Below, one piece after another: positions 1-46,360 of a stretch of DNA of 64,000 nucleotides. The notes under the pieces were generated by a model that worked only from the letters and a program-made list of their open reading frames with translations, ran no database searches and was not told the origin of the DNA. Origin of the DNA: Hyaloraphidium curvatum SAG 235-1 (Eukaryota > Fungi > Monoblepharomycota). The position numbers and the translations under genes are program-made. Position 1 is the first letter of the stretch, and every line of letters starts with the position of its first letter. The DNA lies in the NCBI GenBank assembly GCA_025558095.1, contig JAIVFI010000027.1:310001-374000 (forward strand), in the 5' to 3' direction.

Positions 1-49
1 AAGCGGAAGGTTCGAGTGTTCGACTACGGCTGGTGACCCCGACTGACGT

Positions 50-559
50 CACCCTTGCCACAAACCGTCGGCCGGCCCGGAAGTGAGGGCGATATCCCGG
101 CTACGAAGGCATCGCGGTCCAAAGGGGACCGGGCCCGTGCGGCCGCTGCTTCGGGCGACGCGTCGTCCTCGGGCGGCCGCGCGCGCAGTGGCCGGGCGGG
201 GAACACCGGGAGGGAGACCGGGAAGAGGGCGAGCCACGCAGCGTCCGAGAACGTCGGCTCCGCTGATTCCGCGTCCGAGAATGTCGGCTCCGCAGAGGGA
301 GCGTCCTTGACGTCGGGATTTGCGTCGGAGGGCGACATGGCCAAATGAACGGGCGGAAAAGGGAAGACGTCCAACTTCCGAGGGGGCCGGATGCCAAAAG
401 GTCGCCGGGGACGGACTCTAATTTCCATACGTCCTGCCGCCATTCCATATCTAGTGCTTCGCTGCTTGAACGAAAATGTGCTGGGTGCAGTTGATGTTAC
501 TACAGCTGGTTTACCCCCCGTTTCACTTCCGGGCCGGCCGACGGTTTGTGGCAAGGGTG
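50..559. mobile_element. Non-autonomous TIR element (Pack-type MITE) with CAC...GTG termini and a 4-bp ACGT target-site duplication
   Basis: Perfect inverted repeat 46-86 / 523-563 (acgtcacccttgccacaaaccgtcggccggcccggaagtga). ACGT lies at 46-49 and 560-563. No transposase inside. Internal ~30-bp tandem repeat at ~240-295. Confidence 0.85.
87..338 (-). pseudogene. Captured 5' fragment of a 7TM membrane-protein family gene inside the TIR element
   Basis: MSPSDA...FSDAAWLALFPVSLP...ARARSPLDRDAFVAGISP aligns with the N-terminus of the 3771 gene (FNAAEWIALFPAPVP...AVRGPLARDALLRGLRP). It is truncated at the TIR. Confidence 0.65.
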
Positions 560-5531: not shown

Positions 5532-7098
5532 TCAGGGCAGGAAGATGGAAGCCCCCTTCTGCTTGGCATAGCCTGCCTCCTCGGCAACCAACGCCGGCAG
5601 CCGCGTCTCCCAGACCACGTCCAGCCATTCGACGATCCGCGTCCTCGTCTCCAGCGGAGAAATGATCTGCAATCGGCGAGTCAGCTCCAGGAACGAGCTG
5701 CTCGTCCACCTCCGGCACCCACGTCCTCAACGTCGAACGCTTCTGCGCTCCGCACGGGGCTCGACACGGCCCTTAGTTTCCTGGCAATCGCCTCCCTCTT
5801 CCTCTCCCTCTCCGCCGGGTCCTTTATCGCCTCCAGCCTCCCCTTGAACGCCGCCTCCACCCCGCCCTGCAGCGGGAGGCTGCCCCACTCCCCCGACGGG
5901 AACGCCACGCGCACGTTGCACATGGCGTCGCCGCCCTCCCCGCGCGCGGCGAGGATCCCGCCCGCGACGCCGTACTTCTTCCTCGCCACGACCGTGAACC
6001 ACGGCACCCGCGAGTCGAACGCCACGGCCGTCAGCCTGCTCCCCTTTCGGATCGTGCCCGCTCTCTCCGCCTTGGAACCGACGGCGAACCCGGGGCAGTC
6101 GACAAAGTTCACGATGGGGAGGTGGAACACCCCCGCGACGCCGATCAGCCGGCACAGCTTCTCGCACCCGTCGGCGCCGATCGCGCCGCCCTCGTGCCGC
6201 GGGTCGCCGGCCATCACCGCCGCGGGCTTCCCGTCGAACCGGGCGAACAGGGTGCGCACCTCGCGGCCCCAGCCGCCGCCGATCTCGAAGAGGGAGCCGG
6301 CGTCGGCGACCAGGCGGAGGTAGGACATGGGGTCGTAGGGTTTGGAGGGGTCGGGGGGGATGATCTTGAGCAGGGCGAGGGGGTCAGGGTCCGTTTCGGG
6401 ATCGCGCGGCGGGGCAAGGGGGGGGAGGGACCACCGGTTGGAGGGGAGGTACGACAGCCAGCGCCTGACCTGCGCGATGGCGTCGGCTTCGTCCGCGGCC
6501 ACGTTGTCGGCCGTGCCGTTGCCCCCGTGAACGTCGACGCCCCCGAGCTGGTTTTTTGTCAGGTCCTCGTGGGTCGCGGGGCGCACAACCGGTGGCCCAG
6601 CAGCAAAGATCTGCCCCGTCGTTTTTGGCGCGACGACAAAGTGCGCCGTGGTGGCCTTAGCGGCCCCAAGACCGACCGTCGGCCCGAGGCAGGCGCACGC
6701 GACGGGTACTTCGTCCAGCATGCGGATCCAGTGGAGGTAGCCGATCGCGGTGCCCGAGGTCATCTTGGAGTACCTCTGCTTGAGGATGACGGCGACGGAG
6801 CCGCCGCCAGAGGAGCCGTCGAGGAGCCGGACCATGGGAACGCGGAGCTCCCGGGCGAGGGACTCGGCGTGGATGGCCTTGCGGCCGATGGCGCCGTCGG
6901 CGTGGCCTCCTCTCACCGAAAAGTCTGCGCGGGACCAAGAGCTTCAATCAGGCCCGGTTCCTCGAAGCATGCCCATGTCACCCACCGTCGGCGCCCACAA
7001 TGACCGGCCTCCCGTCAATCCTCGCCTGGCCCATGACAAAGTTGGCTCGCGTGAAGCTCTTCAGCTTCTCCGGGTTGGCCTCGTCGTACGTAGTCGAA
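5532..7098 (-). pseudogene. Acyl-CoA carboxylase carboxyltransferase (PCCB/MCCB-like), 3' part of a split gene
   Basis: FVMGQARIDGRPVIVGAD|DFSVRGG, LLDGSSGGGS, IFAAGPPVV, QLGG..VH..NG, NFVDCPGFAVG..AE. Introns ~5666-5721 and ~6925-6986; stop at 5532. No in-frame N-terminus adjacent. Confidence 0.85.
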
Positions 7099-7410
7099 CG
7101 CGGCAAGGGCGTCGTACGCCTCGATGGCGTCCATTTCAGGGTGAGAAATTGGGAGAAAGAATCGGTTCACGCCCCGCGGGGGCGCCGAGCTCCGCAGGAC
7201 GGTGCTCCGCAGGACGGCGCGTCCAGCACGCGAGAGGGATGGCGCGGGAGGCGACAGTCCTTCGAAAGCGCCGTCGATGACGCCGCGACGGCGTGAAGTG
7301 AAATGGACGAGCAGGAGTTCACTCCACGGCCCCCGCCCGCGGTGGCAGACGTGCTGCTACTAGACAATCAGAGGAGACATCTATGCACTCCGATATCGCG
7401 TTCCATTCAA

Positions 7411-8949
7411 TCAACGCTTCCTCTTTCCAACCCTGCCCGCCTTGATCTCCTTGACCCTGTCCACCGCCGTCCAGTGGTTGTACATGATCCTGCGCCCCGC
7501 GATCTTCCTCGGCCTCGAGCTCACCGGAGACAACCGCCGGGCCTTTTCGACCTCCCAGCGCTCCTTGAACTCCTTCCTGTCGCGCCCGACCTTGGCGTAC
7601 TTGGGCACGTCCTTGTTGATGAAAGTGATCAGAGCCTCCCTGTGGACTGAACCGCCCGAGTTGTACATGGGCAGATTCATATGCTCCTCGACGTACTCGG
7701 AAATGAGAAGGCTCCCGGGCGGCGTATCAATCGCGAGTCCGAGCCGCACCATCACCTGCCCGCCTCCTTCCACCTGACGCTTCTTGGTCGAGGTCGAAAA
7801 GACGCCAATGAGGCAAGAGGTGCCTTCCAGGTTATCGTCGTCGGCGTGAATGTCCGTCGTCATGTCCTCTGCAATCTCATAAGTCGTCGTGGCTGACGTG
7901 GCAACCATGCGAAGATCCTCGGGGAGGTCGTCGACGTAGCCAGCATTGATGGCGTATTGCTCTGGCATGAGCTCTTTGAAGTCCTGGCTCATGGCCTCGG
8001 CCACGCGGTGCAACTTTGCCATGGGATAGAGGACCTCCAGCTTCTCGTTCCACTTGTACGGCCGGACTTTGAAACCCTTCATCCCAAGGTAGTCGACCGT
8101 CGTGCTGCAGTAGTGTGCCGTAAGCCCCGCGAGCACCACCCTCCCGGGATTGTCATCGGATGCGACGTTAGCGCGATCGAGTGGATCCCCAATCCAGGCC
8201 AGCTTATGCAGCACATCGCCGAGCTCGCCCCAATCGCCACCGTGCTCAGTCTGGACCAGTTTGGAGAGCCACGGTGGCCTGCACGTCGCCAGCAGGGCCA
8301 GTTTCCGCTCTCCATTCGATTGCCGTGCATAAACGCGGACAGTTTTCCCAGGTTCAAGGCGGATTCTCTTCCATCCGCCCTTGCGCGGGGGCAAAGTCGG
8401 CACCTCCACCTGGCCAGGGAGCAGGTGCGGCGGTCTCCCGGTTTTGGCGGCGGCGCCCGGCTCCAAACGCACTTCATTTGCTTCGCTTATGAGTTGCCTC
8501 AGGTGGCTCGATTCGGTGCGGGTGCCCCCGACGAGGCTGTCCTTCAGCGCCGCGAGCGCGCTGTCCTCCTTCCTGGCTGTCTCCAAGTGCCTGAAATCCG
8601 GCCAGGTATCGACGTCGTCGTCGACGTCGCACTCAATCTCGTTCCCCTCGATCACTTCGAACTGCGCAAGGCAAGCGCGCACGAAGGCCGCCTGGTTGCA
8701 GAGGCGGGTCCCAGCACCCCACGAGGGCCGCGGCGCCTCGGCCGCCCGGGTGCGCGACGAGGAGTCGCCAGACGGATCGGCTGACGACGGGCCTGCGGAG
8801 GATGGCCCCGCGGTCGGGTGCGGGTTGGGGCGGCCGTGGGCGCCGGTGGAAATCCGCGCCTGGACGATGTGCGACGGGTGGCCCTGGGCGTTACGCGAAG
8901 CGTTCCGGGCACGTCGCCGTCTGCCGTTGCTCTGGCTGTGCCGAGGCAT
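7411..8949 (-). CDS. TET/JBP-family 2OG-Fe(II) nucleic-acid dioxygenase, intronless, 512 aa
   Basis: TDIHADDDN (HxD), GGGQVMVRLGLAIDTPPGSLLI, EEHMNLP (distal His), HREALITF (2OG-binding Arg). Basic C-tail RVGKRKR. Confidence 0.8.
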   Translation of the reverse strand: MPRHSQSNGRRRRARNASRNAQGHPSHIVQARISTGAHGRPNPHPTAGPSSAGPSSADPSGDSSSRTRAAEAPRPSWGAGTRLCNQAAFVRACLAQFEVIEGNEIECDVDDDVDTWPDFRHLETARKEDSALAALKDSLVGGTRTESSHLRQLISEANEVRLEPGAAAKTGRPPHLLPGQVEVPTLPPRKGGWKRIRLEPGKTVRVYARQSNGERKLALLATCRPPWLSKLVQTEHGGDWGELGDVLHKLAWIGDPLDRANVASDDNPGRVVLAGLTAHYCSTTVDYLGMKGFKVRPYKWNEKLEVLYPMAKLHRVAEAMSQDFKELMPEQYAINAGYVDDLPEDLRMVATSATTTYEIAEDMTTDIHADDDNLEGTSCLIGVFSTSTKKRQVEGGGQVMVRLGLAIDTPPGSLLISEYVEEHMNLPMYNSGGSVHREALITFINKDVPKYAKVGRDRKEFKERWEVEKARRLSPVSSRPRKIAGRRIMYNHWTAVDRVKEIKAGRVGKRKR

Positions 8950-11900
8950 TGGTGCGGCGCCCTGCCGGCCGCGCGATGGCCGGGGTGAACGGCGCGGAGA
9001 TGGACCCCGGCGGTCAGTCAGGGTCTCCCGCTTCGGCCGGCATTCGGCTGTGGTTCACCCGCCGCTTCCCCTCCGCGGCCATCCCGGGAGCAAGAAGGGA
9101 CGGGACCCAACAGGCGCTTCAACTGCGACGTGTTCAGCAACCGCAACCTGTTTCGGAAGGACGCGTGTGCCCCAGGCCGGGAATCGTCATCGGAGGATCC
9201 AATCCTCCGTCTTCGATTCCATCCATCGCTGGCTCGAGATTGACCCAGCACGCCCTTTCCCACGAAGCAGGGCCTCATTATTTACGCCAGCTGCCGCGTG
9301 TGGAGCTTCCAGCGCGACACAGCGGATCTGCATCCCGATTATCTGGCAACCCATGCTAGCCATCTCTGTGGGGTTTGTCGGCGGCGGGGAGGGTGGCACA
9401 TAGGTCCATTGTATCGTGGAAGCACCGCAGAGCGAGCCGCGGGTCACTCGGGGTTGATTGGTTGGCGAAAAATTGCCGATGTCGAACACAGCTGCTGACT
9501 TTCTATCCACATCACCACAAGCAACAGAGAAGGACATCTGAAAGTCATCCAAGCTTCAGTTGACATTTGGTCCTTCCGATCGGTGGCGAATCATGCTTGG
9601 CAAAGTGATGCTTGAAGATCTGATTTGACATGCAACGGGTACGATGTCAGCATGCACAAGTCCGATTATCTGGAGGTGCGCAAAGACCTTCGGCAGCCAG
9701 GAAGTAATAAACCCAATGTAAACAATCTATCTCGCTTGTCAAAGTGATGGTAGACGTTCTGTCCAGGCACGGAGAAGGTTCACCTCCGAAAAGCGCAGCT
9801 CAACTGTGCACACCAAGAGTTGTTTTTCGTCCTCTCCGATATCATGGCGCGCACAGGATTATTAGTTTGATCGCGTTCAAGGCGAGGAAAACCCCGCCGT
9901 TGGCCTTGTTGGGCCTACACCTTGCTCGACCAGGTGGCATTTCTCGAGACCTTGAATACATACCGAAACAATCTAGGAGCTCGGATTCCAACACACCGGC
10001 GACCAATACGGGTTAGAAGAGCGGTTTCCTGTGTGCAAAGTCAACATCCGAGGGAGACCAACGCCGTGCATGCCACTCGAGTCCCAGCCCAGTCGCACTG
10101 CGCAGGTGCTGAAGAGCGAATGAAGGTTCAAAGCAAGCCTGGTAGTTGCCCTTGCATTAAGAACCATGTTTCCTGACTAAGAGTGCGGTGCCTTTCTGCA
10201 CTCACGCGAAACTCGATTGGAAGCCAGGGGTGAGCACGCGGCTCGGTTTCGGCGTCGGGTAAACAAACGCTCGCAGTGCTTCCGCGCGCTCGCCTTGCGC
10301 CGTCGCCGCGGCCATCCGGCCAACAGTGCCTGTGGCTAGCACGACTCGATAGCGGCGGCGCCCCAAGGGGGACGGCGCCCGCCCTTGGCTGAGGACGGCA
10401 CCGCGGAAGCACCCCGCCGCGGCTCTCCTGACGGCCGTGGCACTTTGACCGCGGCCAACGGCCCGCCAAGGGACTCAACCCGACGGGCGGATAGCGATGC
10501 GACCCAAGTCGATTGACGGTCTTGCCCCCTCTGCGCGTGGGACGGCCCGCAGTCGCCCGTGGCGGGTTGGCGGGCGCCGGAACGGGGCTTTGGAGGATGC
10601 CGGGGACTGGGGGGCGGGGGAATGAACACGGTAGCTCCCCGAGCCTGCGGTGTCGCAACCCACTCGTCGGCATCGGTCGCGACGCACCGTGGAGCCCCGG
10701 CAGATGGCCCGACGCGGGCGCCCTACCTCGACGAACCCATGATTATCCTTGTCACCCCCTTTCAGACACTGTCGCCTCGCATTTGCACCGGGGTTCCGGT
10801 GGTCTCGGCTCCGCGGCTGTCGATGGAGTCGGGAGTGGGAAGGCCGTGGGGGTGGATGCCGGGGGCGAAGTGCCGGACGGGGGGTGGGGGGGGCAGACCT
10901 CGGTGGTCGAGGCCGATTCCCAAAAGACGTCATCCACGACGAACGGCAAGTTTCCGGGTCTTCGCTCGTACCTCGTCGGCGTGCTGACGACCGCTCAGAC
11001 CCCGCGGACGATGAGACCCCCCCCCCCCCCCCTGATGGACCCGGCGCTGATCGGAGATGGCAAAGGCGTTCAGGGAAGCAGTGGGTTCCGCGTCTTCTTT
11101 CAACACCTCTTAAGTACCCGGTTCTCACCAACTTGCTCGCAGACCTTTCCGCCGCCGTCACCAGCGACGCTACCCACGAGGCCGCGGTCGTCACGCTTGT
11201 CCCCACTACCAACCTCGCCGAGAACCCTGCCGCAAAGCAGATTCCTCTCTCGGCGTGGATCCACGTAAGCACCCCTGCGGCGATGTCCTTTGGGTCATAA
11301 CGCCATCCCTGTATTCCGCAGATCTTCGCCCCCTCCGGTTTGATCGCGACGGATGGGGTCTGCGAGTAGCCCACCGCCTGCTGGAGGGACCGTGTTAATG
11401 GCAACACCGTCACAGGGGGTGAGGACGGATTGCGGATCTGCTGAAGCTGATCATTGTTGTCGTGTTCTTCGTCGTGTACTTTTCGAGCATAGATCATCTC
11501 CGTCAGCACGGCGTCCGGCGCGTCTGCTGCAAATGAAGTTGGTTCAAGCCTTGTCCGATCTCCGAGTGCCAAGATGTGGATGCGGACTGAAGGATCTCGA
11601 CGTGGAACAAAGCCGGCGACGCTTAGTTGAGAGGTTCTTGGGAATGATTCAAGCAGGGGAGTCGAGTCGTCGCTCGATGCAGCCGTGTGGTCCTGGTCGT
11701 TCTCAGCCTCGAAATCAGATGCGCGGCAAGATCCTAGTAAAACCTAATGGTGACGAGTCCCGCGGGCGGGAGGGGATGCGCTGGAGCAGCAGGTGGCGAC
11801 CATGCCGAATCCAGCAGCGACACATGCGCAATCGTTGCGCCGAAGGAGGGCTAGTGAGGGCAAGACGTTACCGGAGGGAAGGAGGAATGGAGACTTTGGT

Positions 11901-13468
11901 CGCCGGCGTCAGTCACAGTGGCCGCCCGCGTCGGTCACAGTGGCCAAGGTCCATGCCAGACAATCAGAGTATTGCGGTCCCGGTCATGTCCCGGCAAAGT
12001 GCGCGCAAGTCGAGGCCCAAGGTGCACGGTATCCGCATTCCCATCGACCCGCCAAGCTTGCCGGAGCGTCAGCACGCCCAAGCTTTGCGCGGAGGAGGTG
12101 CTCTGAACCAGCATAAACGGCGAGCACGGCGGTTCAAGCCCACGGGAAAAGCAGTTCTGCCCGAACGCGAGTGTAGGCGTTGCGTGAGCATGCAAATGCC
12201 GCGAGTCCTGCTGCACCCATCGACAATCCACGCTCTCCCTCCCGCCCTCTGGGCACCGCGCCCGCCCGGGAAGCGATGCCGCGCACCGTGCCCGTGGAAT
12301 CCCGCCCGGCGCCGCCGACGCGCGCCAGGATGCGCTGCGGCAAGGGCCGCGCGAGTCGGTCCGTGGCGTTTTCGGCCGCCCGCGCGCATCCGTGCATCCA
12401 CGGGTGGGGCGGAGGGGTCTGTTCGGGGAGGGGGTCATGAGGTGGGATTCCGTGGTTTTGCTGGGAGCGGCGAGGGCCGGCGGCCGTCCCACGGCGCCGT
12501 GACCGGGGTGTTGGCGAGGAGGTGGGTCCGACTCCGCCCGCGCGCGTCGGCTTCCCCGCACCGCTGACGGTGCGTCTGTAGGGACCACGCCGAGCGGAGT
12601 TTTGTGGTCCGGCGGCGGAGGTTGCGGCTCCCCATGAGCCCCCGCACCATCCTGATGGACACAGCGCCGCCCCGCATGGTCGACGTCCCCGGCGACCGAG
12701 CTTGCGCGGCGGAGTTGCGCCGGGGTACAGGAACGGGGCACCGACGCCGGCGCTCGTTCCACCTGCCCTCCGCCGCCATGGAGCGCGTCCCGCCGATCGC
12801 GGTGACGCGGCAAGGCGCGGCGCGATGCGCTTCCACTTCGTCGCGGCCGCGCTTCGACGCCTCCGGCAGCACGAGGTCGAGCTGCGACGGTGTCTGGTGC
12901 TTGTAGGTGCCCCAGCCCGTTCCCCCCGACCCTCTTTCCGGTGCTTTGGCGGGCGCGGGCTGTTTGGAGTCGCTCGGAGCGGCGCGCCGTGCGGACCGGC
13001 TCGCCCACAACCTCCTCTCCAACTCGACCGCGGATCCCCCGCGAGTCAGACCCGTGCTCCCCGCGGCACGCGTCGGAGACGGAAGCGCCGGCCGCGCTCG
13101 GTGCGCCCCTCGGTCGCCCGGTGAGTGATTCGCGTGCTCGGGCAGCGCGCGCTCATCTCCTCTCGCTCGTTCCCTCCGAAGCTCCCTCGCGTCGGACACC
13201 TGGCCACGCGTCCGCGCACTCCGCCTGTTCCGCACCGGTCGGGTCAGGAACCCCTCGTCGTGCTGGCGTGGGGCCGCACAGCGAGATCTCGCGGCGACCG
13301 CCCGGCACGTCTTGCTGCTGGCTCTCCGCCTCGCAGCTGCTCAGCACCCAGCTCTACGCGCGCGCTCTGCTACCTTCTAGACCTTCTTGCTACGTGGAAG
13401 AGGACTTGGAGGCCCGCGCGCGTAGCTGCCAGCGTTCCTGCCGCCTCGATCCCGGGACCGGCGACACA

Positions 13469-16400
13469 ATGAGCGGCGTCGCGGCCGGCAGCGTCATGTC
13501 GGTCGCGGACGGCACTGGCTGCGACGTTCAGGATGTGTCGCCCCACATTACGCACTGTCTGACCCTCTTGCTGGAGGCCGAGGACGGGGCGGGTGGCGTG
13601 GACGCTTCCGTGATGCGGGCACCTCACGCTCAGCGGCTCGCGGGTCACGTCCCAGTCGCGACTCTCGTGTTTCCGGAAGGAGAAGGTCCCACGTTGACGG
13701 ACAGGTGCCTTGTTCTGAAGCCGCGGAACTGGGTCCCCGTCGACCAGCTGGGCGACAGCGACGTTGTGTTTGGGTCTATGACGGTGGTCAGACGCGATGC
13801 TTGCACTGTGGAGGACTACGTCATGAAGCTTGAACACCTGAACAAGGAGCTTCACTCGAACCATCCCAAGGGCTTCCACGATCAGCTCCGGTTTAGGCGC
13901 CTCGGTGGTGCGGTCCTCAGCGACGGCACGATCTCCCAGAGCCACGGACGGACGTACGGCACGCTCTACCTCAATCACCCTTATGATGTTGCGGTTGCTC
14001 AGCGAGACATAGAAGCTTTGACCGGGAGCCCATGGGACGGCGTAAGGCACTCTACAGAACGGAAGAGCGCGTTTGGCAACAATTTCGAGCTGAGATTGCC
14101 AGCTGCTTTGGCCAGGGACATTGCCGCTGCCACGGGACAGAACGGACGCAAAACCGACAAAGCACCTGCTCTTTTCCCACCCGCCCTCGAGGGCGCTGGG
14201 GTCCCGCGCGCCCATCGGGACGAACACCTGAGCGGAATCTATGGTGGCGACGGTTGCGCGACCGTCTATGTCAGACCCGCTGACAATTTCACCGAGATAC
14301 GCTACACTTTCTCTGCAAAGAAGGTGTTCAAATCCGATGCGGAAAGGATGTTCAACGACCATATGCTCCCGTGGCTCACCGAACGGGGTCTGACTGCGTC
14401 TTTGAAGGTCGCCCGCGAGTATTCTACGAAGGACGGCACTTTGATGCTGGAGTTCTCAGTGACACACACCATTCCGGAGATCCCAGACTTTTCCAATACT
14501 CTGCATTTCGCCTATGACGCGAGCAAGCAACTGCGTCAGACCATGGCAGAGTTGTACCGTCGTTATTGGGAGTTCGCGGCCGATATCTACCGCAACTTTC
14601 TCCGGAGTGCGTTGCGTGCCTATGCTGGCGGAGGTGTCACGCAGCCGCAGGCGATTCTTCAGGCTCGGAACGAGTACGAGACGCGGTATCCCTGGATGAA
14701 AGCCTCTCTGCCATGCTCACGGACTTACTTGTCCGAGCTGAAGAGCGGTCGTAGAGACGTCGAGCACGCTGGCGAAAAGCGAAGGATACCCCCGCTTGCC
14801 GAGTGGCTGGAGAAGAACGGAACCAGCGACTTCTTCCTGGTCGAGGGCCGCGGCGAGCGAAAGATTGCTTACGGACTCAAGCGGGGAGATGGGGGCCGCA
14901 TTACCCTGCCGTTCTTCCCGCGGAGGCTTGCCGCCGTGCGTCGTTCGGGGGCGAGGGGTGCCGGGCGGGCCAGGCTGGCCCAAGCCTTCAAGCTCTTCAA
15001 CGAGAACTTCAACATTTTCCTCATCGACAACGTTCTCGTCGCGTTCGTGTGAGCTTTTACTCGAGTCTCTGCAGCTTCTCGTCGCACTGATTCGCTCCGT
15101 AGAGACGACCCGGACGAGATCGAGGCATTGCGCGCGCGGACGGCGCCCCTCCTCCGGAAGTTGGACGCCAACGGGATCCCTGTGGGGTGGAAGCCGCGGG
15201 AGCCTGCTCCTGAGACGAAGGGCGGGGGCACCGAGAAGCGACCGGCTGCCGACATGGCCGACGGCGGGGAGCAAGACGGCCGGAGGCCGAAGCGTCCGCG
15301 TCAGGCGTCGGCGCGTGGCAGCAAGTCGGGATCCGACGACGGCCCACTCGTCTACGGTCTCCTGAAGGCGAAGCAGGTGGGTGCTTGGCTGGTGGCGTGT
15401 CGCTGCATCGCGAGACCCACGCCGTCTGTCCTTTCCAGCTTGTCAACCTCGACGTGGCCATTCGCGATCGTTTCGAGCACCTGCTGCTCGACACGTTCAA
15501 GACCGTCGGGGGTTCCGATCAAGTACTCTTGGCCGGAGAAGTGCTCGAGCAGCTGATGGTCGAGTACGACGAGGATCCCTGGCGGCAGGAGCGAGATCAG
15601 GTCGCGATGGAGGCGCTGATTGCGGAGTTGATGGTCAACATGAACTCCGTGAGCCTGTGCCTCTCCAGACACTTGCGCTCGGATGATTGACTTGTGCCTA
15701 CCGCGCAGCGAGGGCTCATCTCGTTCGATCGAGGGCACGAGCGGGCGGACAGGGCGGACGACGGGGAGGGGGAGGATTGGCTGGACGACGTGAAGGAACA
15801 CGAGGACGGCAGCGTCTTGTCGGCTTACGGCGACTTATCGGAGGCGGCAGCTGGGCGGGAGTGCTGGGGGGGCGTTTTCAACCAGGGTGTGGTTCGGGAA
15901 TTCGCCTCCATCGACGATCTGGAGCCGTGGATGCGGACGGCGGGCATCGAGGTAATGTTGCCCGAAGCAAAGAATCTCGGTTCTTTGACACGCTGCGCAG
16001 GAACTCTGGTCCCGTGCCCATCGCGTCGCCGAGGCCGAGGCCGAAGCCGAAGAGGAGGACGAGCAGCAGATGCTTCTCAAGGACTACCGCAAGTTCCAAG
16101 AGCGAGTGTGGCCGCCGGAGGACCCGGAGGTGGGGGAAGCTGTTGCGTGTTCTGCTGACGACTAACGCAAGCGCAGTCGATCAAGGAGATGGACGAGATT
16201 GACGGAATTGTAGCGGATTTGCTCGGGGGAGGCATTGTGGACCGCGCGACAGTGGACATGATCCAGGTTGGTTCCTTCGCCTCTACTCGTGCGCGACAGC
16301 GCGACACCAACGTGCTCCTTGTCACAGGACCGTATCCAGGCCGTGATGGCCGGAGATGGGGACGTTTTGGTCATGGAAGAGGAGGCGGAGCCAAGCATCG

Positions 16401-16567
16401 TTGACTTGCTTGAGGCGGTACGTTAATCTTCTGGCTCTCGGGTTGCGCCTGATTGGGCTGTTGGATTCCGCCAGCTCCACGACCGAGCTACGGCGATGAG
16501 GCCTCGTCGCAGACTGCTAGAATGGAGCGACCTGACGAAGGAAGAGTACGAGGCGTTGTGGATTTAG
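13469..16567 (+). CDS. Intein-derived protein: degenerate Hint + LAGLIDADG endonuclease fused to an acidic C-terminal region, ~902 aa, 8 exons
   Basis: Exons 13469-15048, 15103-15376, 15439-15648, 15709-15951, 16001-16129, 16177-16266, 16328-16417, 16475-16567 join in one open frame through GT-AG introns. Motifs LGGAVLSDG and HLSGIYGGDG. Hint-like N-terminus GVAAGSVMSVADG...WVPVDQL..SDVV. Block F/G-like FKLFNENFNIFLIDNVLV. Confidence 0.8.
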
Positions 16568-16952
16568 ATTCATGGTGGGTCGTGGAGTTTAGTTGACGGC
16601 AGCGGCAGACTGATGTTGCTTAGACAGGCATCCTTCGCACGTGCGACACAAAGGAAACGATCTGCTGCTTAACGATACCCCCGCCATGTGCATTCCAACT
16701 GCTGTAGATAACCACGAATCGAAGAATTTTATCCAGTAACCATTGAGCTCGGCTGAGGCAGCGGACCCCATCCGACAACGAGTAGTAGCGCCAGCTTAGC
16801 AGTGCTCAAATATTCTTCACATTAGTTTCCTTCAGCTTTTTGCTTTTGCATTCGTGCGTCAGGGTTGGGCGGTGGGGGACAGCCGGAATCTCGGGGTCCT
16901 CCACCCGTCCGACTCTCCTGACCGCCTTCCCCCCGACCGCATCGCGGCGCCG

Positions 16953-17472
16953 ATGTGGAAGTTCAAATCGGCGCCGTCGTCCGACGCCACGCCGGCGCAA
17001 CGGCTCGAGATGGAGATGCTCGCGGCGGTCAAGGCGGCCAACGCCGACATCCTGCGCGGCTACGCGCTGCGGTTCGACGCGCCGCTCGACCACGCCGACC
17101 CCGACGACGGCCAGACGCTGCTGATCAAGGCGGCGATCCACGAGGAGGGGCTGGAGCACCGGGTCTCCCTCTGCCGCATCCTGCTCGAGAAGGGCGCGAA
17201 CCCCGACGCAAGGCAAAGAACAAGAACGCGCAGACGCCGCTCATGTACGCCGCCTCGATGCCCGCCTACAACGTGCCCGTGCTGCGGTTGCTGCTCGACT
17301 ACGGCGCGGACATCGACGCCCTGTCGGGCCAATGCCACACGGCCATCTCGGTCGCCGCCTACCTGGGCCACGAGTCCAACGTGCGCTTCCTGCTGCGCGA
17401 GGGCGCCGACATCGCCGTCAAGGACGGCCAGGGGAAGACCGCCGCGGACTGGGCCTGCGACAAGGACGCGAT
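16953..17472 (+). pseudogene. Ankyrin-repeat protein, frameshifted and 3'-truncated
   Basis: GQTLLIKAA, LLEKGANPDA, QTPLMYAA, LLDYGADIDA, GKTAADWA. Frameshift at ~17208-17216. Runs into antisense carboxyltransferase sequence at ~17473. Confidence 0.8.
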
Positions 17473-17652
17473 CTGGCGTTTCACGCCCGGATCCGAAGGC
17501 TCGAGGAACCGCGACCGCGAGGCGCGGTCCGCCACCTCGGCGAGCACGCCCGCGTACGGGGCGCCGGGCGGCGGCGGGGGCGCCTCGGGCGCGAGAGAGG
17601 AAGAGAGCTGCGCGGCGACCGCGGCGATGCGCTCCGCGGCGGACTTGGGCAT
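17473..17652 (-). pseudogene. 5' part of the carboxyltransferase gene, separated from 5532-7098
   Basis: MPKSAAERIAAVAAQL has a PTS2 consensus R-I-x5-Q-L. VLAEVADRASRSRFLEPSDPGVKRQ matches the family N-terminus that precedes GKLTxRER. Same strand as the 3' part. Confidence 0.7.
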
Positions 17653-28231: not shown

Positions 28232-29850
28232 ATGGACACGCAGACCAACGGCAGCAACGGCGCCGCCGCCGCGCCCTACGGCAAGCCCGGCGGGGGCGAA
28301 GGCCCCGGCCTGTTCCACCGCGTCGCGATGACCTTCACCGTGCCGGCGCTGTTCGTCTGGGACCAGACCGCGTTCGCGCTCGACTTTCTGTTCGCGTCGT
28401 GGCTGTGGCTGCTCGGCGGGCAGGTCAGGTGGGGAGCCATTCGCCGATGGGGCACCTGCCTCGCCCATCGTCCCGTTCTTTCGGGCTGACGGTCCACCCC
28501 ACAGGTTCGGCGTCGACCTCCCCACGCCCACCAACCACCCCATCGTCGTCGCCACCGGCACCTCCACCGGTTCGCCCGCTCCTGCCCCGCGCGCCCGACG
28601 CCGGATCGCTGACTCACCCTTCGTTCTCCTTCGTTCCCCTGTTTGCCCACCACCGCTTCCCCCCATTCGCAGGCATCGGCTACCACTGCGCCCTCTCCCT
28701 CGCCTCGGCCGGCTACCTCGTCTTTGCCGGCGTCCGCAAGCCCTCCGACGGCGAACGCCTCCTCTCCGCGTGGCGCTCCCGCCGGGCGGCCCTCGAAGCG
28801 CGCCGCGCCAACCTCTTCTTCCGCGCGTGGGACTGGCTCGCGGGCAGCGAGGCCGCCGGCTACGTGGAGGGCGGCGAGGTGCGGTGGATCATCGTGGACG
28901 TGGCGCGGACCGAGACGGTCGCGCGGGCGGCGGAGGAGGTGGCGAAACAGGTCCGGGATGCGGGGCAGGCGGGGGTGTACGGGGTGTTTGCCAATGCTGG
29001 TGGGTTGTGCGCTCCCCGGCGGGGCAACGTACGGCGGCGGTGCTGATGCGCGCGCAGGGATCAACGCCGGATGCGCGTTCGAGCTCGAGACGCTGGACGA
29101 GGAGCGCAAGACCCTGGACGTCAACGTCTTTGGCGCCCTCGAGACATGCCGCGCCTTCCTGCCTCTCCTGCGCCGCAACGGCAAGGGCAGGATCGTGGTG
29201 ACGGGCTCGCTCGCCGGGATCGCGACCGCCCCGATGGCCGCCGCATGTAGGTCTCCGGTTCCCCGACCGCCCCGGAGCTGACGCGCCCCCCCTTCCCTTC
29301 CAGACACCGCCTCCAAGCACGCCCTCTACGCCGCCGCCGACGCTATGCGCATGGAGCTCGCCCCGCTGGGCATCGCCGTGAGCAACATGGAGCCCGGCGA
29401 GATCGAGACCGAGATCTGGGGCAAGCAGCTCGGCCTGGTGGACCACATGACGTCGCACCCGCTCCGCAGGATCTGTGGGTCCCTTCGTGTCGCCCGTGCC
29501 CGGCAGGATGCGGCTGACGCCCCCGTGCCGGCGCAGACGAGGGCCACATCCGCTCCTTCGCCGCCGGCCTCAAGCTCGTCTCGGCCTTCCCGGGCACCCC
29601 GCCGTCGTACTGCGCCGTCTCGCTGCTGCACACGCTGGCGTCGCCGTTCCCGCTGCCGCGGTACCCCGTCGGGTTCGGTGGGTCCCTCTTTGCTCGCGAT
29701 CGGCCGGTCGCAGGGGCTGACGCCCCGCGGGCAGACTCGTGGTTCGGGAGGTTCGTCAAGTGGTTCACGCCCGACAGGCTGTGGGACGCGTGGATGGTGG
29801 CGGGGATGAGGGGCGGGATGGCGCTGCCCGAGACGGTGCTGCAGAAGTGA
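28232..29850 (+). CDS. Short-chain dehydrogenase/reductase, paralog 1
   Basis: ATGTSTGIG, VFANAG, DVNVFG, GRIVVTGS, YTASKHA, ELAPLGIAVSNMEPG. Multiple introns. Confidence 0.9.
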
Positions 29851-30079
29851 GCCGCCGGCGGTTGCGGAGGGGATGGGCGATGGGAGGGGATAGATCTTTG
29901 GGTTCTTGAGCGCGCTGGACCGGGAAAAGCTAGTAGATGCATGGGAGCTTCGTCGCGTGCTCGCAGCGCTCTTCGCACCCCGGTCCCCTACCGCGCATTG
30001 GCCGAGCCGGTCCGATCTTTTGATGAAGCCAGACCTCCGATCGGCCGCTCTCCAGCCTTTCCCGAGCACTGGAGGGGCA

Positions 30080-30119
30080 TTGGAAGGCACTGCTATTCTG
30101 ACCTTTATACCACTGACGA
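30080..30119 (-). pseudogene. tRNA-Gly 5'-half fragment
   Basis: Reverse complement tcgtcagtggtataaaggtcagaatagcagtgccttccaa matches the 5' half of the tRNA at 47154. Confidence 0.8.
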
Positions 30120-30236
30120 GTACCACTCTGCTTAGGCGGAGATGGCAGCTTTGGCGGATGCGGTCCGCCGAGGCGGGCAAAAGCCAAGGGGCTGCCACGT
30201 TCCGCCGCAGGAGGCCATTCCCGCAGGCTCGCTCCG

Positions 30237-30276
30237 GGAAGGCACAGTACTATTCTGACCTTTATACCACCGACGA
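30237..30276 (-). pseudogene. Second tRNA-Gly 5'-half fragment
   Basis: Reverse complement tcgtcggtggtataaaggtcagaatagtactgtgccttcc. Confidence 0.75.
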
Positions 30277-30905
30277 CCCCAAGGATCGCCGTATTCGGGA
30301 TCGTGGGCTACTTGGGGCGTGCGGGACGCCGGTGCAGGCCTGCTCGAATGGGCTGGGATGGGAGGCGGATGCAGGGCGACCGTCCGTCATTGTCCGCCTC
30401 GGACTCCCACAGACAGCGACTGCGCAGAGAGCTTGTGCGAGGGCGCTGGACAAGTCCGTGCGGTGGTGGGTTGATGGACGTGCCGCCCGACAGTCCGCCG
30501 TGGGGGAGACACCACCCACAAGAGCCTCCAGCACCCGAGTTCGATGGACGTTCCAAACAGCCTGCGGAGATAACTTTCACGCATCTCGAAGCCGTGATGC
30601 AACGGCGTGACGCACCGCCGAGGTGCAGATCGGCCCCTGCCTGCCCCAGAGTGCTTCTCCACCGAGCCGGGCACCGTGCACTGTAAGATGCGATCTCCCG
30701 CCCGGATGCGCATCGCAATGCATTATTTAGGGGCCGATGCTGCTGCTGGGTGGTTGCCGGGAGCAGGATGCAGCGTTGGGAGGCGGGGCGCCTCACTTTG
30801 AGACCGACCGGCTGTAGGCCGCAGGACGAGGCACACGGAGGCTGGGACCCCAAATCCGTAACCTAATGCGCTGGATGGCACTGGCGGGTCGCGGCAGCGC
30901 GGGAA
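30277..30905. repeat. ~630 bp segment duplicated in inverted orientation at ~46500-47153
   Basis: Near-identical blocks, e.g. caggcctgctcgaatgggctgggatgggaggcggatgcagggcgaccgtccgtcattgtcc. Confidence 0.9.
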
Positions 30906-31169
30906 AGAGCGCGTTGCAGGACGACACCATGCTGTGCTCTGACCTCGGAGGACGACGCCTGCGGCCATCGGCGGGCCGCCCTCTTGGTGCCGCAACGTCG
31001 TTCTGCAAGGGCGCGCAGCTGGTGACTGGGACGCGTCGTCAACCTCGTTGGCGGGGTCAGATCCGGCGGCAAAGATGCCTACCTGTCGTGACTTGACCGC
31101 CTGCACCGGGGTCTTGGAGCCATCGGTGCGGGACGCGGCGGGCGGTCGCCGCCGAAAGGGGGCATTCCG

Positions 31170-31392
31170 TCGGCCACGTTCCCTGCTCGGGTCGGTCAGA
31201 TTCTCTGCGCTCGCCTTGGCCATCGGTCTTTGAGGGCGCTCACCGCCGTCAAGGGCGTCTCGGAGGGCGACGGCATCGCCCCGACGCGGCTGGATCACGA
31301 GGGACGGCCGTTGCGGGGGACGGCGCGCCCTCGGCTGCCTCCGGCGACGGCGCCGGCCCGGACTGCCGCGGATTGAACTCCATTTCGAGCTC
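31170..31392 (-). repeat. Inverted partial copy of repeat R (33143-33360)
   Basis: Reverse complement of gagctcgaaatggagttc.atccgcggcagtccgggccggcgccgtcg...atggccaaggcgag.gc.gagaatctgaccgacccgagcagg. Confidence 0.85.
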
Positions 31393-31551
31393 AGAGAATT
31401 CCGGCGATGGCTGGTGCGCCCCGGTGGATAGTGCCGGGAGGAGGTGGTGGACGCTTTCACTCGTCGGCATTTCAAGAGCAGGGACCACAGTCCGGTGCCG
31501 TCCAAACACCACTTCGACTCGTTCCCCACACACCAATTACACCGATTTTGC

Positions 31552-32150
31552 CTAGAAAATCTGCCCAGACGCGCGCAATAGAGCCGCCTCCATGGCACTG
31601 GGGCTGGGGTTTCGCCCCGCTTGGATTTCCGCCCACGCATCGGCGTTCATTGCCAAAGCCAGCGCGACCTCCGCGTCGAACTCCTCGTCCAGCGCTTCCT
31701 GGACCCTCACAGCCAACTCGTCGTTGTCATCTTCATCGTCCTCATCCGGGATGGGTTGGACAGGGTCCCCAGAGTCGTCGTTGTCGCTCTCAAGCTCGTT
31801 GTCCACGACCATCTCCGCGGTCCGAAACGAGCGACTTCGAGGCTCCGCCGGCACCGTGGCCTCCTCCTGCTCATCGTCCTCGTCAATGTGAATGACCATA
31901 GTGGCATCCTGGCGTCGGTATTCGTCCTCTTCCTTCCCAGCATGGATGACGAGTTTCTCCCATGCGGCGGCGTCCACCAGCGCGAACCCCTCCTCCAAAA
32001 GGACCTTGACGTTGGCAAACATGCGCGAGTCATTGTTCTCAGCAACATGGTTCTTTGCACGAGCCCATGCCAGCTCGATGGGGTTGAGTTTGGGGTGGTA
32101 TGGGGGAAGGAAGTGGAGGTAGATGTTGAACTCAAGCGCCAGCTTATCAA
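31552..32150 (-). mobile_element. Tc1/IS630-type DDE transposase C-terminal remnant
   Basis: IDKLALEFNIYLHFLPPYHPKLNPIELAWARAKNHVAENN followed by an acidic tail. N-terminus missing. Confidence 0.85.
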
Positions 32151-32615
32151 TGAAGCGTTCCGGCTGGCATCCAATCTCCAGCAGCAGTTACGATCCGCCT
32201 CTTCGACACGATGGATGTTTAGGGGCTCCAGGGCAATCCCAGGTGTATGGTGCGGGGAATCGCGACCAGCGTTACTCGTTTAAGCCTCCGCTGCTCGCGT
32301 CCCAGTCCCTATCTGGCACCTGTGCTGCGGGCCCGTGCCCGGCCCGAGCGTGCTGACAAACACGATCTTGGCATCCGCGAGGATGCGAAAGTCGGATTGG
32401 TAAGCAAGGACGGACGGTTTCGCTGCGAGCCGAAAAATGGTGCCATGAAATCGGGAGCGAGGCCATTTCGCTGACTATATGGTGTTTAGGAAGCATACGC
32501 ACGAAGGCGAAAGGTGAAGGCGGACAATCCCGTGCCCCCTTCTGACCATCGGGGGAGGTGGTGAATGGTGGAGTGACGGAGGAGGCGTCCAGACTGCTGG
32601 CCTATGCATTCCGGT

Positions 32616-32701
32616 TGGCGTTTGGTCTAGTGGTATGATTCTCGCTTAGGGTTTCTTCTCTGGAATGCGAGAGGTCCCGAGTTCAATCCTCGGAACGCCC
32701 C
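32616..32701 (+). tRNA. tRNA-Pro(AGG) with 14-nt intron (32652-32665); position 1 is T opposite C72
   Basis: ggcgtttggtctagtggtatgattctcgcttAGGg[intron]tgcgagaggtcccgagttcaatcctcggaacgcccc; A and B boxes present. Confidence 0.88.
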
Positions 32702-33049
32702 TTAAGCAGTCATTTTGGTGTCCTGTGGTGGAGACGCAGGGTGGGGGAGCGTGGGGCGGGGGCGGCGGGAGGGGGGGGGGGCAGACCACCACCGATCCCC
32801 TTTTGCTACTGGAGCAAAGTGTTTCGTTTATGGACGCAGCTCAAGGTCTACCGGTTTCAGATGGACAGCTTCTGTGATCACCTCGCTCTCCGGTGGGGTG
32901 GGGGAGAAGCTGTCCTCCGCATTCCCGACGGCGCCCTTTTGTAATGCCACGAGGAAGCGTATGCTACAGGAGGCAATGTTGTGCTCGCGTGCGGAACATT
33001 TCGGAGTCTTGTGTCCCGCGGGGTGGTCGTTCAGGGGGCAAGACGGATC

Positions 33050-34740
33050 ACTGTTGCCCCTCGAACGCACCCGCCCCTCCCGCGCTGCACCCGAGCCAGC
33101 CCGCAACCGACTCCGCGACCACCCGAGCCCGCGACCGTCATCTGAGCTCGAAATGGAGTTCGATCCGCGGCAGTCCGGGCCGGCGCCGTCGTCCGAGGCA
33201 CCGGAGGTGGCGCCGTCCCCCGCAACCGCCGTCCCGCGTGATCCTAGCGCGTCGGGACAATGCAGTCGTCCTCCGAGACGCCCTTGACGGCGGTGAGCAC
33301 CCCAAGACACCCATGGCCAAGGCGAGTGCGGAGAATCTGACCGACCCGAGCAGGGAGACCCGCCGACGCGGCGGCGTCCTGGCCGAGCGACTCCCGCTCC
33401 CCACCACGCCTGCAAGTCTCCATCTCGGCTGCCCATCTGAACGAGTAAGTGTTTCGAGGGGCAAGTGGTCGAGATTGGGGCCATTGATTGTCGCCGGCGG
33501 AATCCTCGGCGGGCAGGCGAGCCGGAGCAGCCGCCAGCGACTGCGCGCCATCCGACGCCCGGCGATGGTCGAGGCCCCCAACTGCGACGGATCCGCGGCT
33601 TTGGATCGTCCTGGAACAGAGGGCGCCCGCGGAAGCGGCCTCTGGAGGCCGCACCGAGGCAGACGGCGCGGGGCAAGTCGGCGCTGACTGTGCGCGGCCG
33701 TCGCCCCCTCCGCTCGCCGAGGGGGCCATCTGAACGGCCGACACGCCGCCGGCTGGAAGAAAACCAGGCATGACGGTCGACCAGATGCTCAGACGCGTGC
33801 TGCAGCGGCCGCTGAGGGCAGTCGGGCGGGCCTCGTCGGCAGTTGCACCAACTCGGCCACGCCGAGCTGGGGACGCGCCGGCGATGGAGAATCCACCGCC
33901 CTGCGGCGGAGGGCGCCGGCATTTGCTGTTTCACGGCATGTTTTGCCCGCTCCGCCTGGTTTCGGCGGCGAGTTCTGCGGGCAGCGATCGCGGTCGTTTT
34001 GGGCGCCCATGCGCCGCCCTGCGAACTCCATCTCGGATCGCAACTCGCCCCACGGCGGACACCCCTTCTGCCCCGTACTTTCGCGGCGCAGAACGTCGCG
34101 CGGACGCGTTTCCCGGACCTTTATCCCTTTCCCCGCCCTCGGCGCACGCCTGCGACCGCCCCCGAGCGCCCCAAGCCGGGCGGGGCAGCGCGGGACCGCG
34201 GCACCGGCGGGCACCTTCCTGCGCCGCTGCTGGGCTCGGGACACCGCGCAATCATGTTGGGAGATGGAGATTCGGGCGCCGCCGCGCCCCGGCCCACCAA
34301 GGCCGCGGTGGCAGAGGCGGAGAAGAAGGTCCGGGGGGAGAGGGCAGGCGATGCCTTGGAGGCCGCCAGGGCCGTCGCTGTGGAGCGCGGACTCTCTCGG
34401 GAGGCAGCGGCGGCTGCTGCGGGCACCAGGGAGCTCCGGGAGCTGCTTCGCCGCCTGCCCAAGACGACATACCTCGACGAGTGCGCCGTTCTGGTTGGTA
34501 CAGGCGCTGCCGCCGTTCCAATCCGCTGCCTGACGCTTGGCCCGTGCTTCGCGTACCAGAACGCCCATTCACTTGTCGTTCGCGGCGGCGTCGAGGAAGA
34601 TTGGCAGGGAAGGATATCGAAGGAGCGGGCGAGGGCGATGGCTTTCAACAGGGTTGGCCCAGGATACCGCAGCTGCCGCGATCTCGCCGATCTCACCTCC
34701 GTTGTCAACCGCAGGCTTGCTGGGAGAAGCAGGAGGAGAA
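33050..34740 (+). repeat. Repeat R copy 1 (upstream region plus first exons of the Cys-rich gene)
   Basis: Direct repeat of ~42450-44110, highly similar over the coding part. Confidence 0.9.
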
Positions 34741-37700: not shown

Positions 37701-38495
37701 GTGAAGCCGTCCTTCCAGATCACAATCTCATCTTTGCGCCGCACAGGCAGACGGCATCGTCTGCGGCTACTGTCGCAACTACCCCTCTGGCAATGTTTGC
37801 CGGCTTGCCTACCTCGCCGACAAGCTAGGGGAGGAGTACGCCCTCAAGTTCTACCGCGGCGAGATCTTCAGGCACCACGGGACGGGCGCGACCGTCAAGT
37901 GCGGCCGCCGCTGCTGCACCTGCGTGGGGTGGGTGCCCGTGACGATCATCGCCGTGCGACGGAACTGACTCTGCCTTCCGCCGTCAGTCTCCCTCCGGGT
38001 GGACAGTGCCCTCCCTGCTCGGAAGTCGACGCCAAGGGCAACCGCAAAGGCTCTATCGACAGGTGCATGATCAAGAAGAGCATGGAGGAGGCCAGGGCGG
38101 GCGAGATCCCCACCGAGACCGAGGTCGACATTCCTTTCTTCTGGACCGTGATCCTGCGCGAGCTCAACATCGCGGCGGAGTTCCGCACCAAGCGGAATGA
38201 GCAGAAGGATTCGCAGGATGACTACGTGCGGGACGACGCAGGCAACGTGATCAGGATGTGGCACATGTTGCAAGCCGACCGCAACGTCCCGCACCGGCGC
38301 CTCCGGTGCCCCTGCTGCTTCTGCCAGGGCTTCTCGATCGCCGGCAGCAAGAAAGCAGGCTGCGTCCCGTGCCAGAGCGAGCGGAGCCAGGAGCGCGAGC
38401 GGTGCAAGTTCGTGAAGGCAAAGGGTGCTGCTCCGACGGAGTGGCTGTTCGAGTACGCCAAGGAGCAGGCGGCGTTGGCGGCTGACGATGCCTAG
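34254..38495 (+). CDS. Large multi-exon Cys-rich protein of unknown function (internal LRLRGG, many CxxC, possible HNH-like C-terminus); exon structure partly inferred
   Basis: Coding-like exons joined by GT-AG introns. DPLRLRGGAP at ~35382-35411. CVHC, CKTCCLYC, CGYC, CPPC, LQADR..RLRCPCCFCQ, CVPC. Confidence 0.55.
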
Positions 38496-38624
38496 GCAAT
38501 AGATTGTTGGCAACCTCCGTTTAGCGCCTTCCTTCGTCCATTGGATGTTTTGATTCGTACGGGGTCCATTCCGGCGCGATACAGCTGGGCCGATTCGACG
38601 CGAGCGCAACAAACACCACCAATT

Positions 38625-38812
38625 GTGTCGCTCCCGTCCCCGTCCCCCTAAAGAGATGGTTTTTGCTGTCGGCCGGGGGGGGGCGGGAGAAAGGGGGGTG
38701 AGATGGTTTTGCTGTCGGGGGCTCCTCCGTCGCTCCCGTCCCCGCCCCCCTGAAGAGATGGTTTTTGCTTGTTCGGCACGGGGGGGGGGAGATGGTTTTG
38801 CTGTCGGGGGGC
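38625..38812. repeat. Imperfect tandem repeat (agatggttttt?gctgtcgg core, four copies)
   Basis: Core at ~38654, 38701, 38756 and 38790; gtcgctcccgtccc also repeated. Confidence 0.75.
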
Positions 38813-39373
38813 GCGGAGGAGCGGGACGACTGCAAGGCAACAAGAGACGTCCCTGGACATGACGTTCTCAACAACGCCCCGCGACGCTAGACTGGTCAGG
38901 CAGCTGCTCTGTCTGTCCCGGAAGCTTTGCTGTCACGAGGGGGGTTTCACAGGCGTTGAAGTCGATCCCCGTGTGGCGGCACGGGCCGCCTGGGTTAACA
39001 CTTTCCTATTTGGGGACTTCATTCCGAACCGGGTGGACTCATCGGGAGGCATAGAGGTTGCGGAGGCGAACGGTCGTACACTTGTACGGTCGTACAGTTG
39101 TACGGCCGTAGAGCTGTGGGACTCCACCACGCACCAGCCGACCCCGTAGAATATACAAGCAGCGCGAAATGTAGTAGAGGGGACTGTTCCGCTCGGAAGG
39201 CGAACCGTTCGGAATCCGGTCTTCGCGTGATTGCGAGGTCCGAGTTCCGTGACCGGCGTCCCCTTCTGAGAAACCTTCCGCAACCCGAAAGTCACTTTCA
39301 CTCGTGCAAGGTGCGACTAAATCGCAAGCAACCATCGTTGAAGATCAAACAAACATTCTTGCCAGCTGTTGCG

Positions 39374-44110: not shown

Positions 44111-44528
44111 AGAACGTGAGTTCTCCTGTCGGCCGGCCCCAATGGCCGTCGCTTCGGCACGACCTGATATCATCCTTCACTATAGAATCGGGTTCTTGTT
44201 TTGCTGGCGAGTTCGTCGCGCCGCCATTTTCCGAGCTTCCCTCCTTATTGCACGTCGCCCCATGGACGGACACCTCTTCTGCCCCGCCTTTTGCGGCGCA
44301 GAACATCGCGTGGACGCGTTTCCCGCGCCCTCGCTCCTCTCCCGCCCTTAACGCGCTCGACCGGCTTCCCCGCTTTCGGCGCTTTCCGACAAAGCTGGCC
44401 AACTTGTGTCTCCGCAAAAGAGCATCAATTGAATGAATGCACCACGATTCAAGATGTACACCACCATGAAAAGCTCTGTCACTGCTCAAGACGTGGGTTT
44501 TCGTGACCACCACAAGCCTCCAGCCTCT

Positions 44529-46220: not shown

Positions 46221-46360
46221 CGCGAAGGAGAGGCTCTTGAAGTGCTCAGAATAGGCGATTTCGGGCCCCGAAGGGGAGAAGAATGGTGAGTATACGCAAT
46301 GTTTGCAGCAGCGTCGCACCGGCCAAACACATCCCGCGGTTAACATCCTAGTTGGCTAAA

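What the first reader, a model, noticed from the sequence alone, without database searches (positions are those of the whole stretch)
7099..17472. 10.4-kb cargo block with TET/JBP and intein-derived endonuclease inserted into a carboxyltransferase gene
Seen: the carboxyltransferase N-terminus (17652-17473, PTS2 ... GVKRQ) and its remainder (from ..TTYDEANPEK, ~7098-5532) are on the same strand 10.4 kb apart. About 30 expected codons (the GKLTxRER..LLD.GSF.E region) are missing. Both block ends are outward-reading truncated genes: ankyrin on the right, an MDAIEAYDALAAFDY start on the left. I see no TIR, TSD or transposase, only weak similarity cggcaagggcg / cgacaaggacg. Inference: this may be a mobile module that integrates at a double-strand break, possibly made by its own LAGLIDADG enzyme, and carries a base-modifying dioxygenase. 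I do not recognise this pairing from described elements.
Basis: partly seen in the sequence, partly recalled or inferred. Interest (0 to 1): 0.82.

Follow-up and report, generated by a model that had tools for sequence, protein, structure and literature searches.

The report
Nuclease-TET block splitting a fungal gene
A 10-kb stretch carrying a DNA-cutting enzyme descended from a self-splicing intein, a DNA-base-modifying enzyme and scraps of other genes has broken a metabolic gene in a water fungus; its layout resembles the yeast WHO10 jumping element but arose separately, though only one copy exists and its mobility is unproven.

Summary
A carboxyltransferase (CT) gene is split, 27-29 codons are lost, and there is no TSD, TIR or transposase. 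An RNA contig spans the left junction; the right junction was not read-tested.

The block is a patchwork:
- a transcribed, phage-like TET/JBP gene with its catalytic residues;
- a single-copy, full-length intein homologue that has lost all four splicing motifs but keeps both LAGLIDADG aspartates (HO/WHO-like, probably of giant-virus intein ancestry);
- directly downstream of it, a 94% copy of the 5' third of an ankyrin-AAA gene that is intact on another contig.

This layout matches yeast WHO10 insertions. It is not a WHO member: no FBA1, no zinc finger, a different intein family.

The TET-nuclease pairing is not shown to be stable. TET relics and a 1.2-kb repeat recur beside tRNA-Lys genes without this nuclease, and a second CT paralogue is split by an unrelated 4.4-kb block.

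Best reading (0.5): a WHO10-like self-mobilising island. Main rival (0.35): a passenger block captured at a break. Other scan notes report the intein gene, the second split CT gene and other TET/nuclease islands in this genome.

The parts
5532..7097 (-). Carboxyltransferase remainder (from STTY..), 3 exons, no stop or frameshift, transcribed and spliced
   Evidence: Pfam Carboxyl_trans 1e-57; intron 6925-6985 spliced in X1; exon comparison with paralogues
7098..7410 (-). Left end of block: unique promoter/5'UTR-like stretch with an ATG at 7134 that is out of frame with CT (39-codon uORF). RNA reads from at least 7285 into the CT remainder. The last 5-11 codons may be decayed CT sequence or microhomology
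   Evidence: CT-likeness P about 0.02-0.03, post hoc
7411..8949 (-). Intronless TET/JBP 2OG-Fe dioxygenase, 512 aa, H368-x-D370, H423, R437; transcribed; 5' and 3' relics on C40 and C26
   Evidence: Atlas Tet_JBP 0.96; phrog_24024 5e-9; PF12851 0.022, below cut-off; phage protein tblastn 1e-4, pairwise 2e-10; RNA contig 7419-8785; relics
9477..10138 (-). Small polyadenylated spliced transcript (intron 9620-9687), no long ORF
10289..11900 (+). Most abundant transcript contigs of the region tested, spliced (GT-AG introns 11081-11142 and 11265-11321); runs past 11900; coding status unknown
   Evidence: first exon has no Pfam hit
11919..13118 (.). GC-rich non-coding repeat, 82-85% identical to two copies on C26 in a tRNA-Lys/TET-relic island, where it precedes an unrelated orphan gene
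   Evidence: no codon bias; no covariation
13469..15049 (+). Full-length intein homologue with splicing motifs lost (Cys1 to Gly, block B His, block F Asp, terminal HN-C) and both LAGLIDADG aspartates plus the conserved Lys kept; single copy
   Evidence: AF2 pLDDT 84.7 and Foldseek to TliVMA, PI-PfuI, PI-SceI
15050..16426 (+). Predicted intron-containing acidic C-terminal tail of the nuclease gene; no Pfam family, no CxxC zinc finger seen; splicing inferred from sequence only
16811..17466 (+). Copy of the promoter and 5' third of the ankyrin-AAA gene intact at C6:850251 onward; 94% overall, about 2% diverged in coding sequence, one frameshift
17467..17472 (.). Right junction, 6 nt of uncertain origin (possible 3-nt microhomology); not read-tested
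17473..17652 (-). Carboxyltransferase N-terminal piece with PTS2-type signal

Best explanation
The block works like a yeast WHO10 insertion. Shown: an intein lost protein splicing but kept its endonuclease and became a stand-alone nuclear gene; it sits with a TET/JBP gene and host-gene scraps inside a CT gene that lost about 85 bp, with no TSD. Inferred, step 1: the nuclease gene joined a TET-plus-repeat module from a family of selfish islands otherwise found at tRNA-Lys genes. Inferred, step 2: it earlier sat at or cut the ankyrin-AAA locus and carried off its 5' part as a fossil of that site. Inferred, step 3: the whole unit was copied or excised and joined by end-joining into a break in a redundant CT paralogue, probably a break made by its own enzyme. 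Inferred, step 4: the TET enzyme oxidises methylated bases and so helps keep the island expressed.
For: All four splicing motifs are lost while the nuclease core is kept over a long branch, which implies selection for cutting. The layout (nuclease gene, gene fragment immediately downstream, host gene interrupted without duplication) is the one described for WHO10 (PMC7282813). The ankyrin piece has decayed (10 substitutions, 1 frameshift) while both CT halves are lesion-free, weakly suggesting it was in the block before the CT break. The only such gene found in 32 Mb lies inside a gene-splitting insertion. TET is transcribed, and TET cargo is common in fungal mobile DNA (PMC12730594).
Against: Single copy, so repeated mobility is not shown. 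TET and the repeat occur elsewhere without this nuclease. Another CT paralogue is split at a different site by an unrelated block, so gene-splitting insertions here do not need this enzyme. No recognisable target site; end similarity is near chance. Expression of the nuclease gene and the right junction are untested.
Confidence: 0.5

Rival explanations
1. One-off repair scar: a break made by something else was patched with a pre-existing orphan island and a copied ankyrin piece; the intein-derived gene is a passenger, possibly domesticated like HO.
For: Single copy; patchwork of unrelated sources; second CT paralogue split by a different block; tRNA genes broken and duplicated at C26, C40 and in this window; other agents' unchecked notes describe several such scars in this genome.
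Against: Chance inclusion of the genome's only intein-derived nuclease gene in such a patch is unlikely unless nuclease islands are themselves break-prone; the layout matches WHO10.
Confidence: 0.35
2. Decayed TET-carrying DNA transposon (KDZ, Dada or other) that lost its transposase and ends.
For: Eleven fungal transposon lineages carry TET (PMC12730594); related relics sit at split tRNA-Lys genes, as Dada elements do (PMC3706591).
Against: No TSD, TIR or transposase remnant; an 85-bp deletion instead of a duplication; the TET is phage-like; the C26 slot gene has no DDE/KDZ hit; the tRNA duplication is 19 bp or more, not 6-7.
Confidence: 0.07
3. Misassembly at the right junction, or a translocation joining unrelated pieces.
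For: The right junction is not read-tested (the single read-laying run was used on 6000-11900).
Against: The left junction is confirmed by RNA; the CT halves are in correct order and orientation on one contig; the ankyrin copy differs by 6% from C6, so it is not a collapsed repeat.
Confidence: 0.04
4. Relic of an integrated giant virus.
For: Best homologues are polB inteins, and a free-standing, splice-degenerate relative lies beside an NCLDV capsid gene; the TET is virus-like.
Against: No viral hallmark gene in the block; predicted spliceosomal introns; host-like GC and CpG content.
Confidence: 0.04

Closest known systems
WHO10 elements of Torulaspora globosa (PMC7282813)
   Same: Extein-less, splicing-dead intein-derived LAGLIDADG gene; multi-kb insertion that interrupts an unrelated host gene without duplication; gene fragment immediately downstream plus other fragments.
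   Different: Different intein family (polB/RPB2/GCN5/importin-type inteins rather than VDE), acidic tail instead of a zinc finger, predicted introns, a 5' rather than 3' gene fragment, TET cargo, one copy rather than five, no FBA1 link.
HO endonuclease of budding yeasts
   Same: Stand-alone intein-derived nuclease gene without exteins or motif G.
   Different: No known cellular role; lies in a gene-disrupting insertion; no zinc finger.
TET+ fungal DNA transposons (PMC12730594)
   Same: TET/JBP gene as cargo of apparently mobile DNA in a fungal-type genome.
   Different: No transposase, TIR or TSD; host outside the three lineages described there; phage-like TET; paired with a homing-type nuclease.
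Dada transposons (PMC3706591)
   Same: Related relics on C26 and C40 adjoin tRNA-Lys genes split near the D-loop.
   Different: No DDE transposase found, no 6-7 bp TSD, and the window's block is not in a tRNA gene.
NCLDV/eukaryote inteins (PMC10710043)
   Same: Full-length sequence and fold homology, HINT plus dodecapeptide nuclease.
   Different: Splicing residues lost, no host protein.

Membership tests
Active intein | N-terminal Cys/Ser, block B TxxH, block F Asp, terminal HN + C/S/T, flanking exteins | tested here: not met
   All four replaced and no exteins; 70 of 85 homologous domains keep an xN[CST] end
LAGLIDADG endonuclease | Two dodecapeptide motifs with catalytic acidic residues and the fold | tested here: met
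   D156 and D265 of alignment A1; Foldseek E 8e-9 to TliVMA intein
LAGLIDADG endonuclease | DNA cleavage activity | not testable with these tools
   needs an assay
WHO elements | Extein-less intein-like nuclease lacking motif G | tested here: met
WHO elements | C-terminal CxxC zinc finger | tested here: not met
   Tail exons are acidic, with no Pfam hit and no CxxC array
WHO elements | Association with FBA1 or FBA1 fragments; VDE/HO ancestry | tested here: not met
   Adjacent fragment is ankyrin-AAA; top relatives are polB/GCN5/importin/SET inteins
WHO10-like mobility | Several strain-specific insertion sites | tested here: inconclusive
   One copy in the one genome available; no relatives offered
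TET/JBP dioxygenases | HxD...H triad, 2OG-binding Arg, family similarity | tested here: met
   H368, D370, H423, R437; Atlas 0.96; phrog_24024 5e-9; Pfam only 14 bits, below cut-off
TET+ DNA transposons (KDZ, hAT, EnSpm, Helitron and others) | Transposase plus TIR/TSD or Helitron ends | tested here: not met
Dada | DDE transposase, 6-7 bp TSD, insertion in a small RNA gene | tested here: not met
   No tRNA in or at the block ends; no transposase

The most novel reading that the evidence does not exclude
An independent, giant-virus-derived origin of a WHO/HO-like mobile nuclease in an early-diverging fungus, belonging to a genome-wide class of transposase-free islands in which a TET/JBP base-modifying gene is paired with an interchangeable site-specific nuclease and which integrate at self-made breaks.
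Probability: 0.25. Interest if true: 0.85.

Novelty: new variant of a known kind. Interest (0 to 1): 0.6.

Why it matters
HO and WHO are the only extein-less, intein-derived nuclear nuclease genes I found described, both from VDE in budding yeasts. A second origin from another intein family would show that this route is repeatable. It would also give a fresh case for the open question of how WHO10-type elements integrate without homology. I found no paper pairing TET/JBP with a homing-type nuclease in a eukaryotic element, although the library lacks most subscription journals. Even as a passenger, the gene is a new meganuclease candidate with testable targets.

Tried and rejected
- TIR/TSD and tandem-repeat searches: nothing at the ends.
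- End similarity as a recognition site: about 4% by chance; a looser version of the motif is not enriched in the window.
- Left end as the partner of the C6 intergenic region, i.e. C6 as the empty site: no significant alignment.
- 1.2-kb repeat as structured RNA or coding DNA: covariation term unfavourable; no codon bias and non-triplet indels.
- TET word searches found nothing; its single-sequence fold was useless (pLDDT 30). PF12851 genome search rang nowhere, controls included.
- C26 slot gene as transposase or His-Me nuclease: no Pfam, PDB or clear PHROG support; single copy.
- Tree placement of the nuclease: long branch, unresolved.
- Junction-spanning ORFs are not in the protein collection.
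- Spliced models were searched exon by exon by reference; the joined search step was left out.

Full report
Setting. The window is G000:C27:310001-374000 of a 31.9-Mb, 55-contig, GC-rich, intron-containing genome. Other scan notes call it the early-diverging fungus Hyaloraphidium curvatum; I did not test that.

The split gene. The piece 17652-17473 starts with a PTS2-type signal and ends GVKRQ; the remainder resumes at 7097 with STTY. Against the intact paralogue on C3 they match residues 14-72 and 98/101 onward, so 27-29 codons are missing. The remainder has no stop or frameshift and no clear excess of private changes: 62, versus 59 and 34 in two paralogues. The break is therefore recent, or the remainder is still constrained. 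A spliced contig of run X1 covers 6000-7285 without mismatch, crossing the left junction. The left junction is thus real, and the remainder is transcribed from inside the block, behind an out-of-frame ATG that gives a 39-codon uORF. The right junction was not read-tested. At least six family members exist, so the loss is probably tolerated (inference).

Ends. There is no TIR or TSD. The 10/12 terminal similarity arises in 3.8% of random GC-rich pairs. The right end, 16811-17466, is a 94% copy of the promoter and 5' third of an ankyrin-AAA gene that is intact on C6; no second 3' part exists. Its coding part differs by 10 substitutions (6 non-synonymous) and one frameshift, whereas its upstream 130 bp differ by roughly a fifth, which I cannot explain. 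The left end is unique.

TET/JBP. ORF 8949-7411 has H368-x-D370, H423 and R437. It matches Tet_JBP clusters made mostly of phage proteins at 0.96, phrog_24024 at 5e-9, a phage protein at 1e-4 (pairwise 2e-10) and PF12851 only weakly. It is transcribed. Broken relatives at 76% DNA identity lie on C26 and C40, both beside tRNA-Lys genes with split or duplicated fragments. C26 also holds two 82-85% copies of the non-coding stretch 11919-13118, one in the same order relative to TET, but followed by an unrelated single-copy orphan gene. So TET plus the repeat form an older module whose downstream slot is filled differently at the two loci.

Nuclease. The ORF from ATG 13469 to 15049 has 90 hits in the representative library, the best at 1e-20. 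The top hits scanned are inteins in family B DNA polymerases, GCN5, importin-beta and SET proteins. It aligns over the full intein length. Cys1 is Gly, the block B His, block F Asp and terminal HN-C are gone, and both LAGLIDADG aspartates and a conserved Lys remain. The model (pLDDT 84.7) matches TliVMA, PI-PfuI and PI-SceI. It is the only such gene found in the genome. By sequence it continues through GT-AG introns into an acidic tail without a zinc finger. In a quick tree it joins, on a long and unreliable branch, a free-standing splice-degenerate gene lying beside an NCLDV major capsid gene. A giant-virus intein origin is therefore likely but not shown; viruses are known to spread inteins into eukaryotes (PMC10710043).

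Context. A second CT paralogue on C25 is also split: its first exon ends at 428333 and the gene resumes near 432800, with an EndoVII-like ORF (phrog E 0.11, weak) just before the remainder. That break lies about 80-100 codons further into the gene and that block shows no similarity to this one where I could compare. Unchecked notes describe more repair scars and several TET-plus-putative-nuclease islands in this genome. Gene-splitting insertions are thus a habit of this genome and do not require this enzyme.

Mechanism. Shown: end-joining-type insertion with deletion, composite cargo, and a splicing-dead nuclease gene with an intact active-site signature. Inferred: the unit behaves like WHO10. 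WHO10 insertions of 2.8-6.6 kb interrupt unrelated genes without duplication, carry a fragment of an earlier host gene immediately downstream, and integrate by an unknown route (PMC7282813). The ankyrin piece would be such a fossil; its decay against lesion-free CT halves weakly supports that order. I give this 0.5, a passenger block captured at someone else's break 0.35, a decayed TET transposon 0.07, misassembly 0.04 and a viral relic 0.04. A role for TET in countering methylation-based silencing is borrowed from PMC12730594 and is untested here.

Membership and novelty. It is not an active intein, not a WHO member (no zinc finger, no FBA1, other ancestry), and not a TET+ transposon or Dada element (no transposase or TSD). 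It works most like WHO10 and is best filed as a new variant of that kind. My paper searches found no TET-plus-homing-nuclease element, within the library's limits.

Limits. Spliced models were searched exon by exon by reference and the joined search step was left out; RNA-supported pieces were only read locally. The viral contig L058 was observed only.

Noticed in passing
G000:C25:427827-432800 (L010 covers 431869 onward): A second carboxyltransferase paralogue split after the GSSGGG motif by about 4.4 kb that ends in an EndoVII/HNH-like ORF.
   Followed up: partly
L030 (C26:485701-495700): tRNA-Lys island: intact tRNA, an inverted copy truncated at the D-loop, a 19-bp duplicate of its sequence, 877-bp inverted repeats, a deleted TET relic and a single-copy spliced orphan gene with Cys/His motifs.
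   Followed up: partly
L031 (C40:292601-296600): About five 315-bp tandem repeats, most carrying a tRNA-Lys-like 5' half, followed by a TET 5' relic and two tRNA-Lys-like genes, one 5'-truncated.
   Followed up: partly
window 28300-47255: Inverted duplication (28301-30905 versus 44700-47191) of a dehydrogenase gene and tRNA-Gly 5' fragments, flanking two IS630/Tc1 transposase pieces (31555-32187, 39655-40695) and a Cys-rich orphan ORF (36381-38492).
   Followed up: no
window 40489-40708: 220-bp, 96% identical element also inserted in a repeat on C5 (L040:1225-1450); probably a solo LTR or MITE.
   Followed up: no
L058 (public contig SRR14578322): Giant-virus contig with a free-standing, splice-degenerate intein-type LAGLIDADG gene (P0007) divergent from a major capsid gene.
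   Followed up: partly
window 10289-11900 and 9477-10138: Two spliced transcripts without a recognisable product inside the block; the first has the highest contig depth of the region tested.
   Followed up: partly
window 48724-51647: Long low-GC orphan ORFs downstream of the tRNA-Gly gene with no meaningful Pfam hit.
   Followed up: no
window 40-86 and 523-569: 47-bp inverted repeat (96%) near the window start, around a 30-bp tandem repeat.
   Followed up: no
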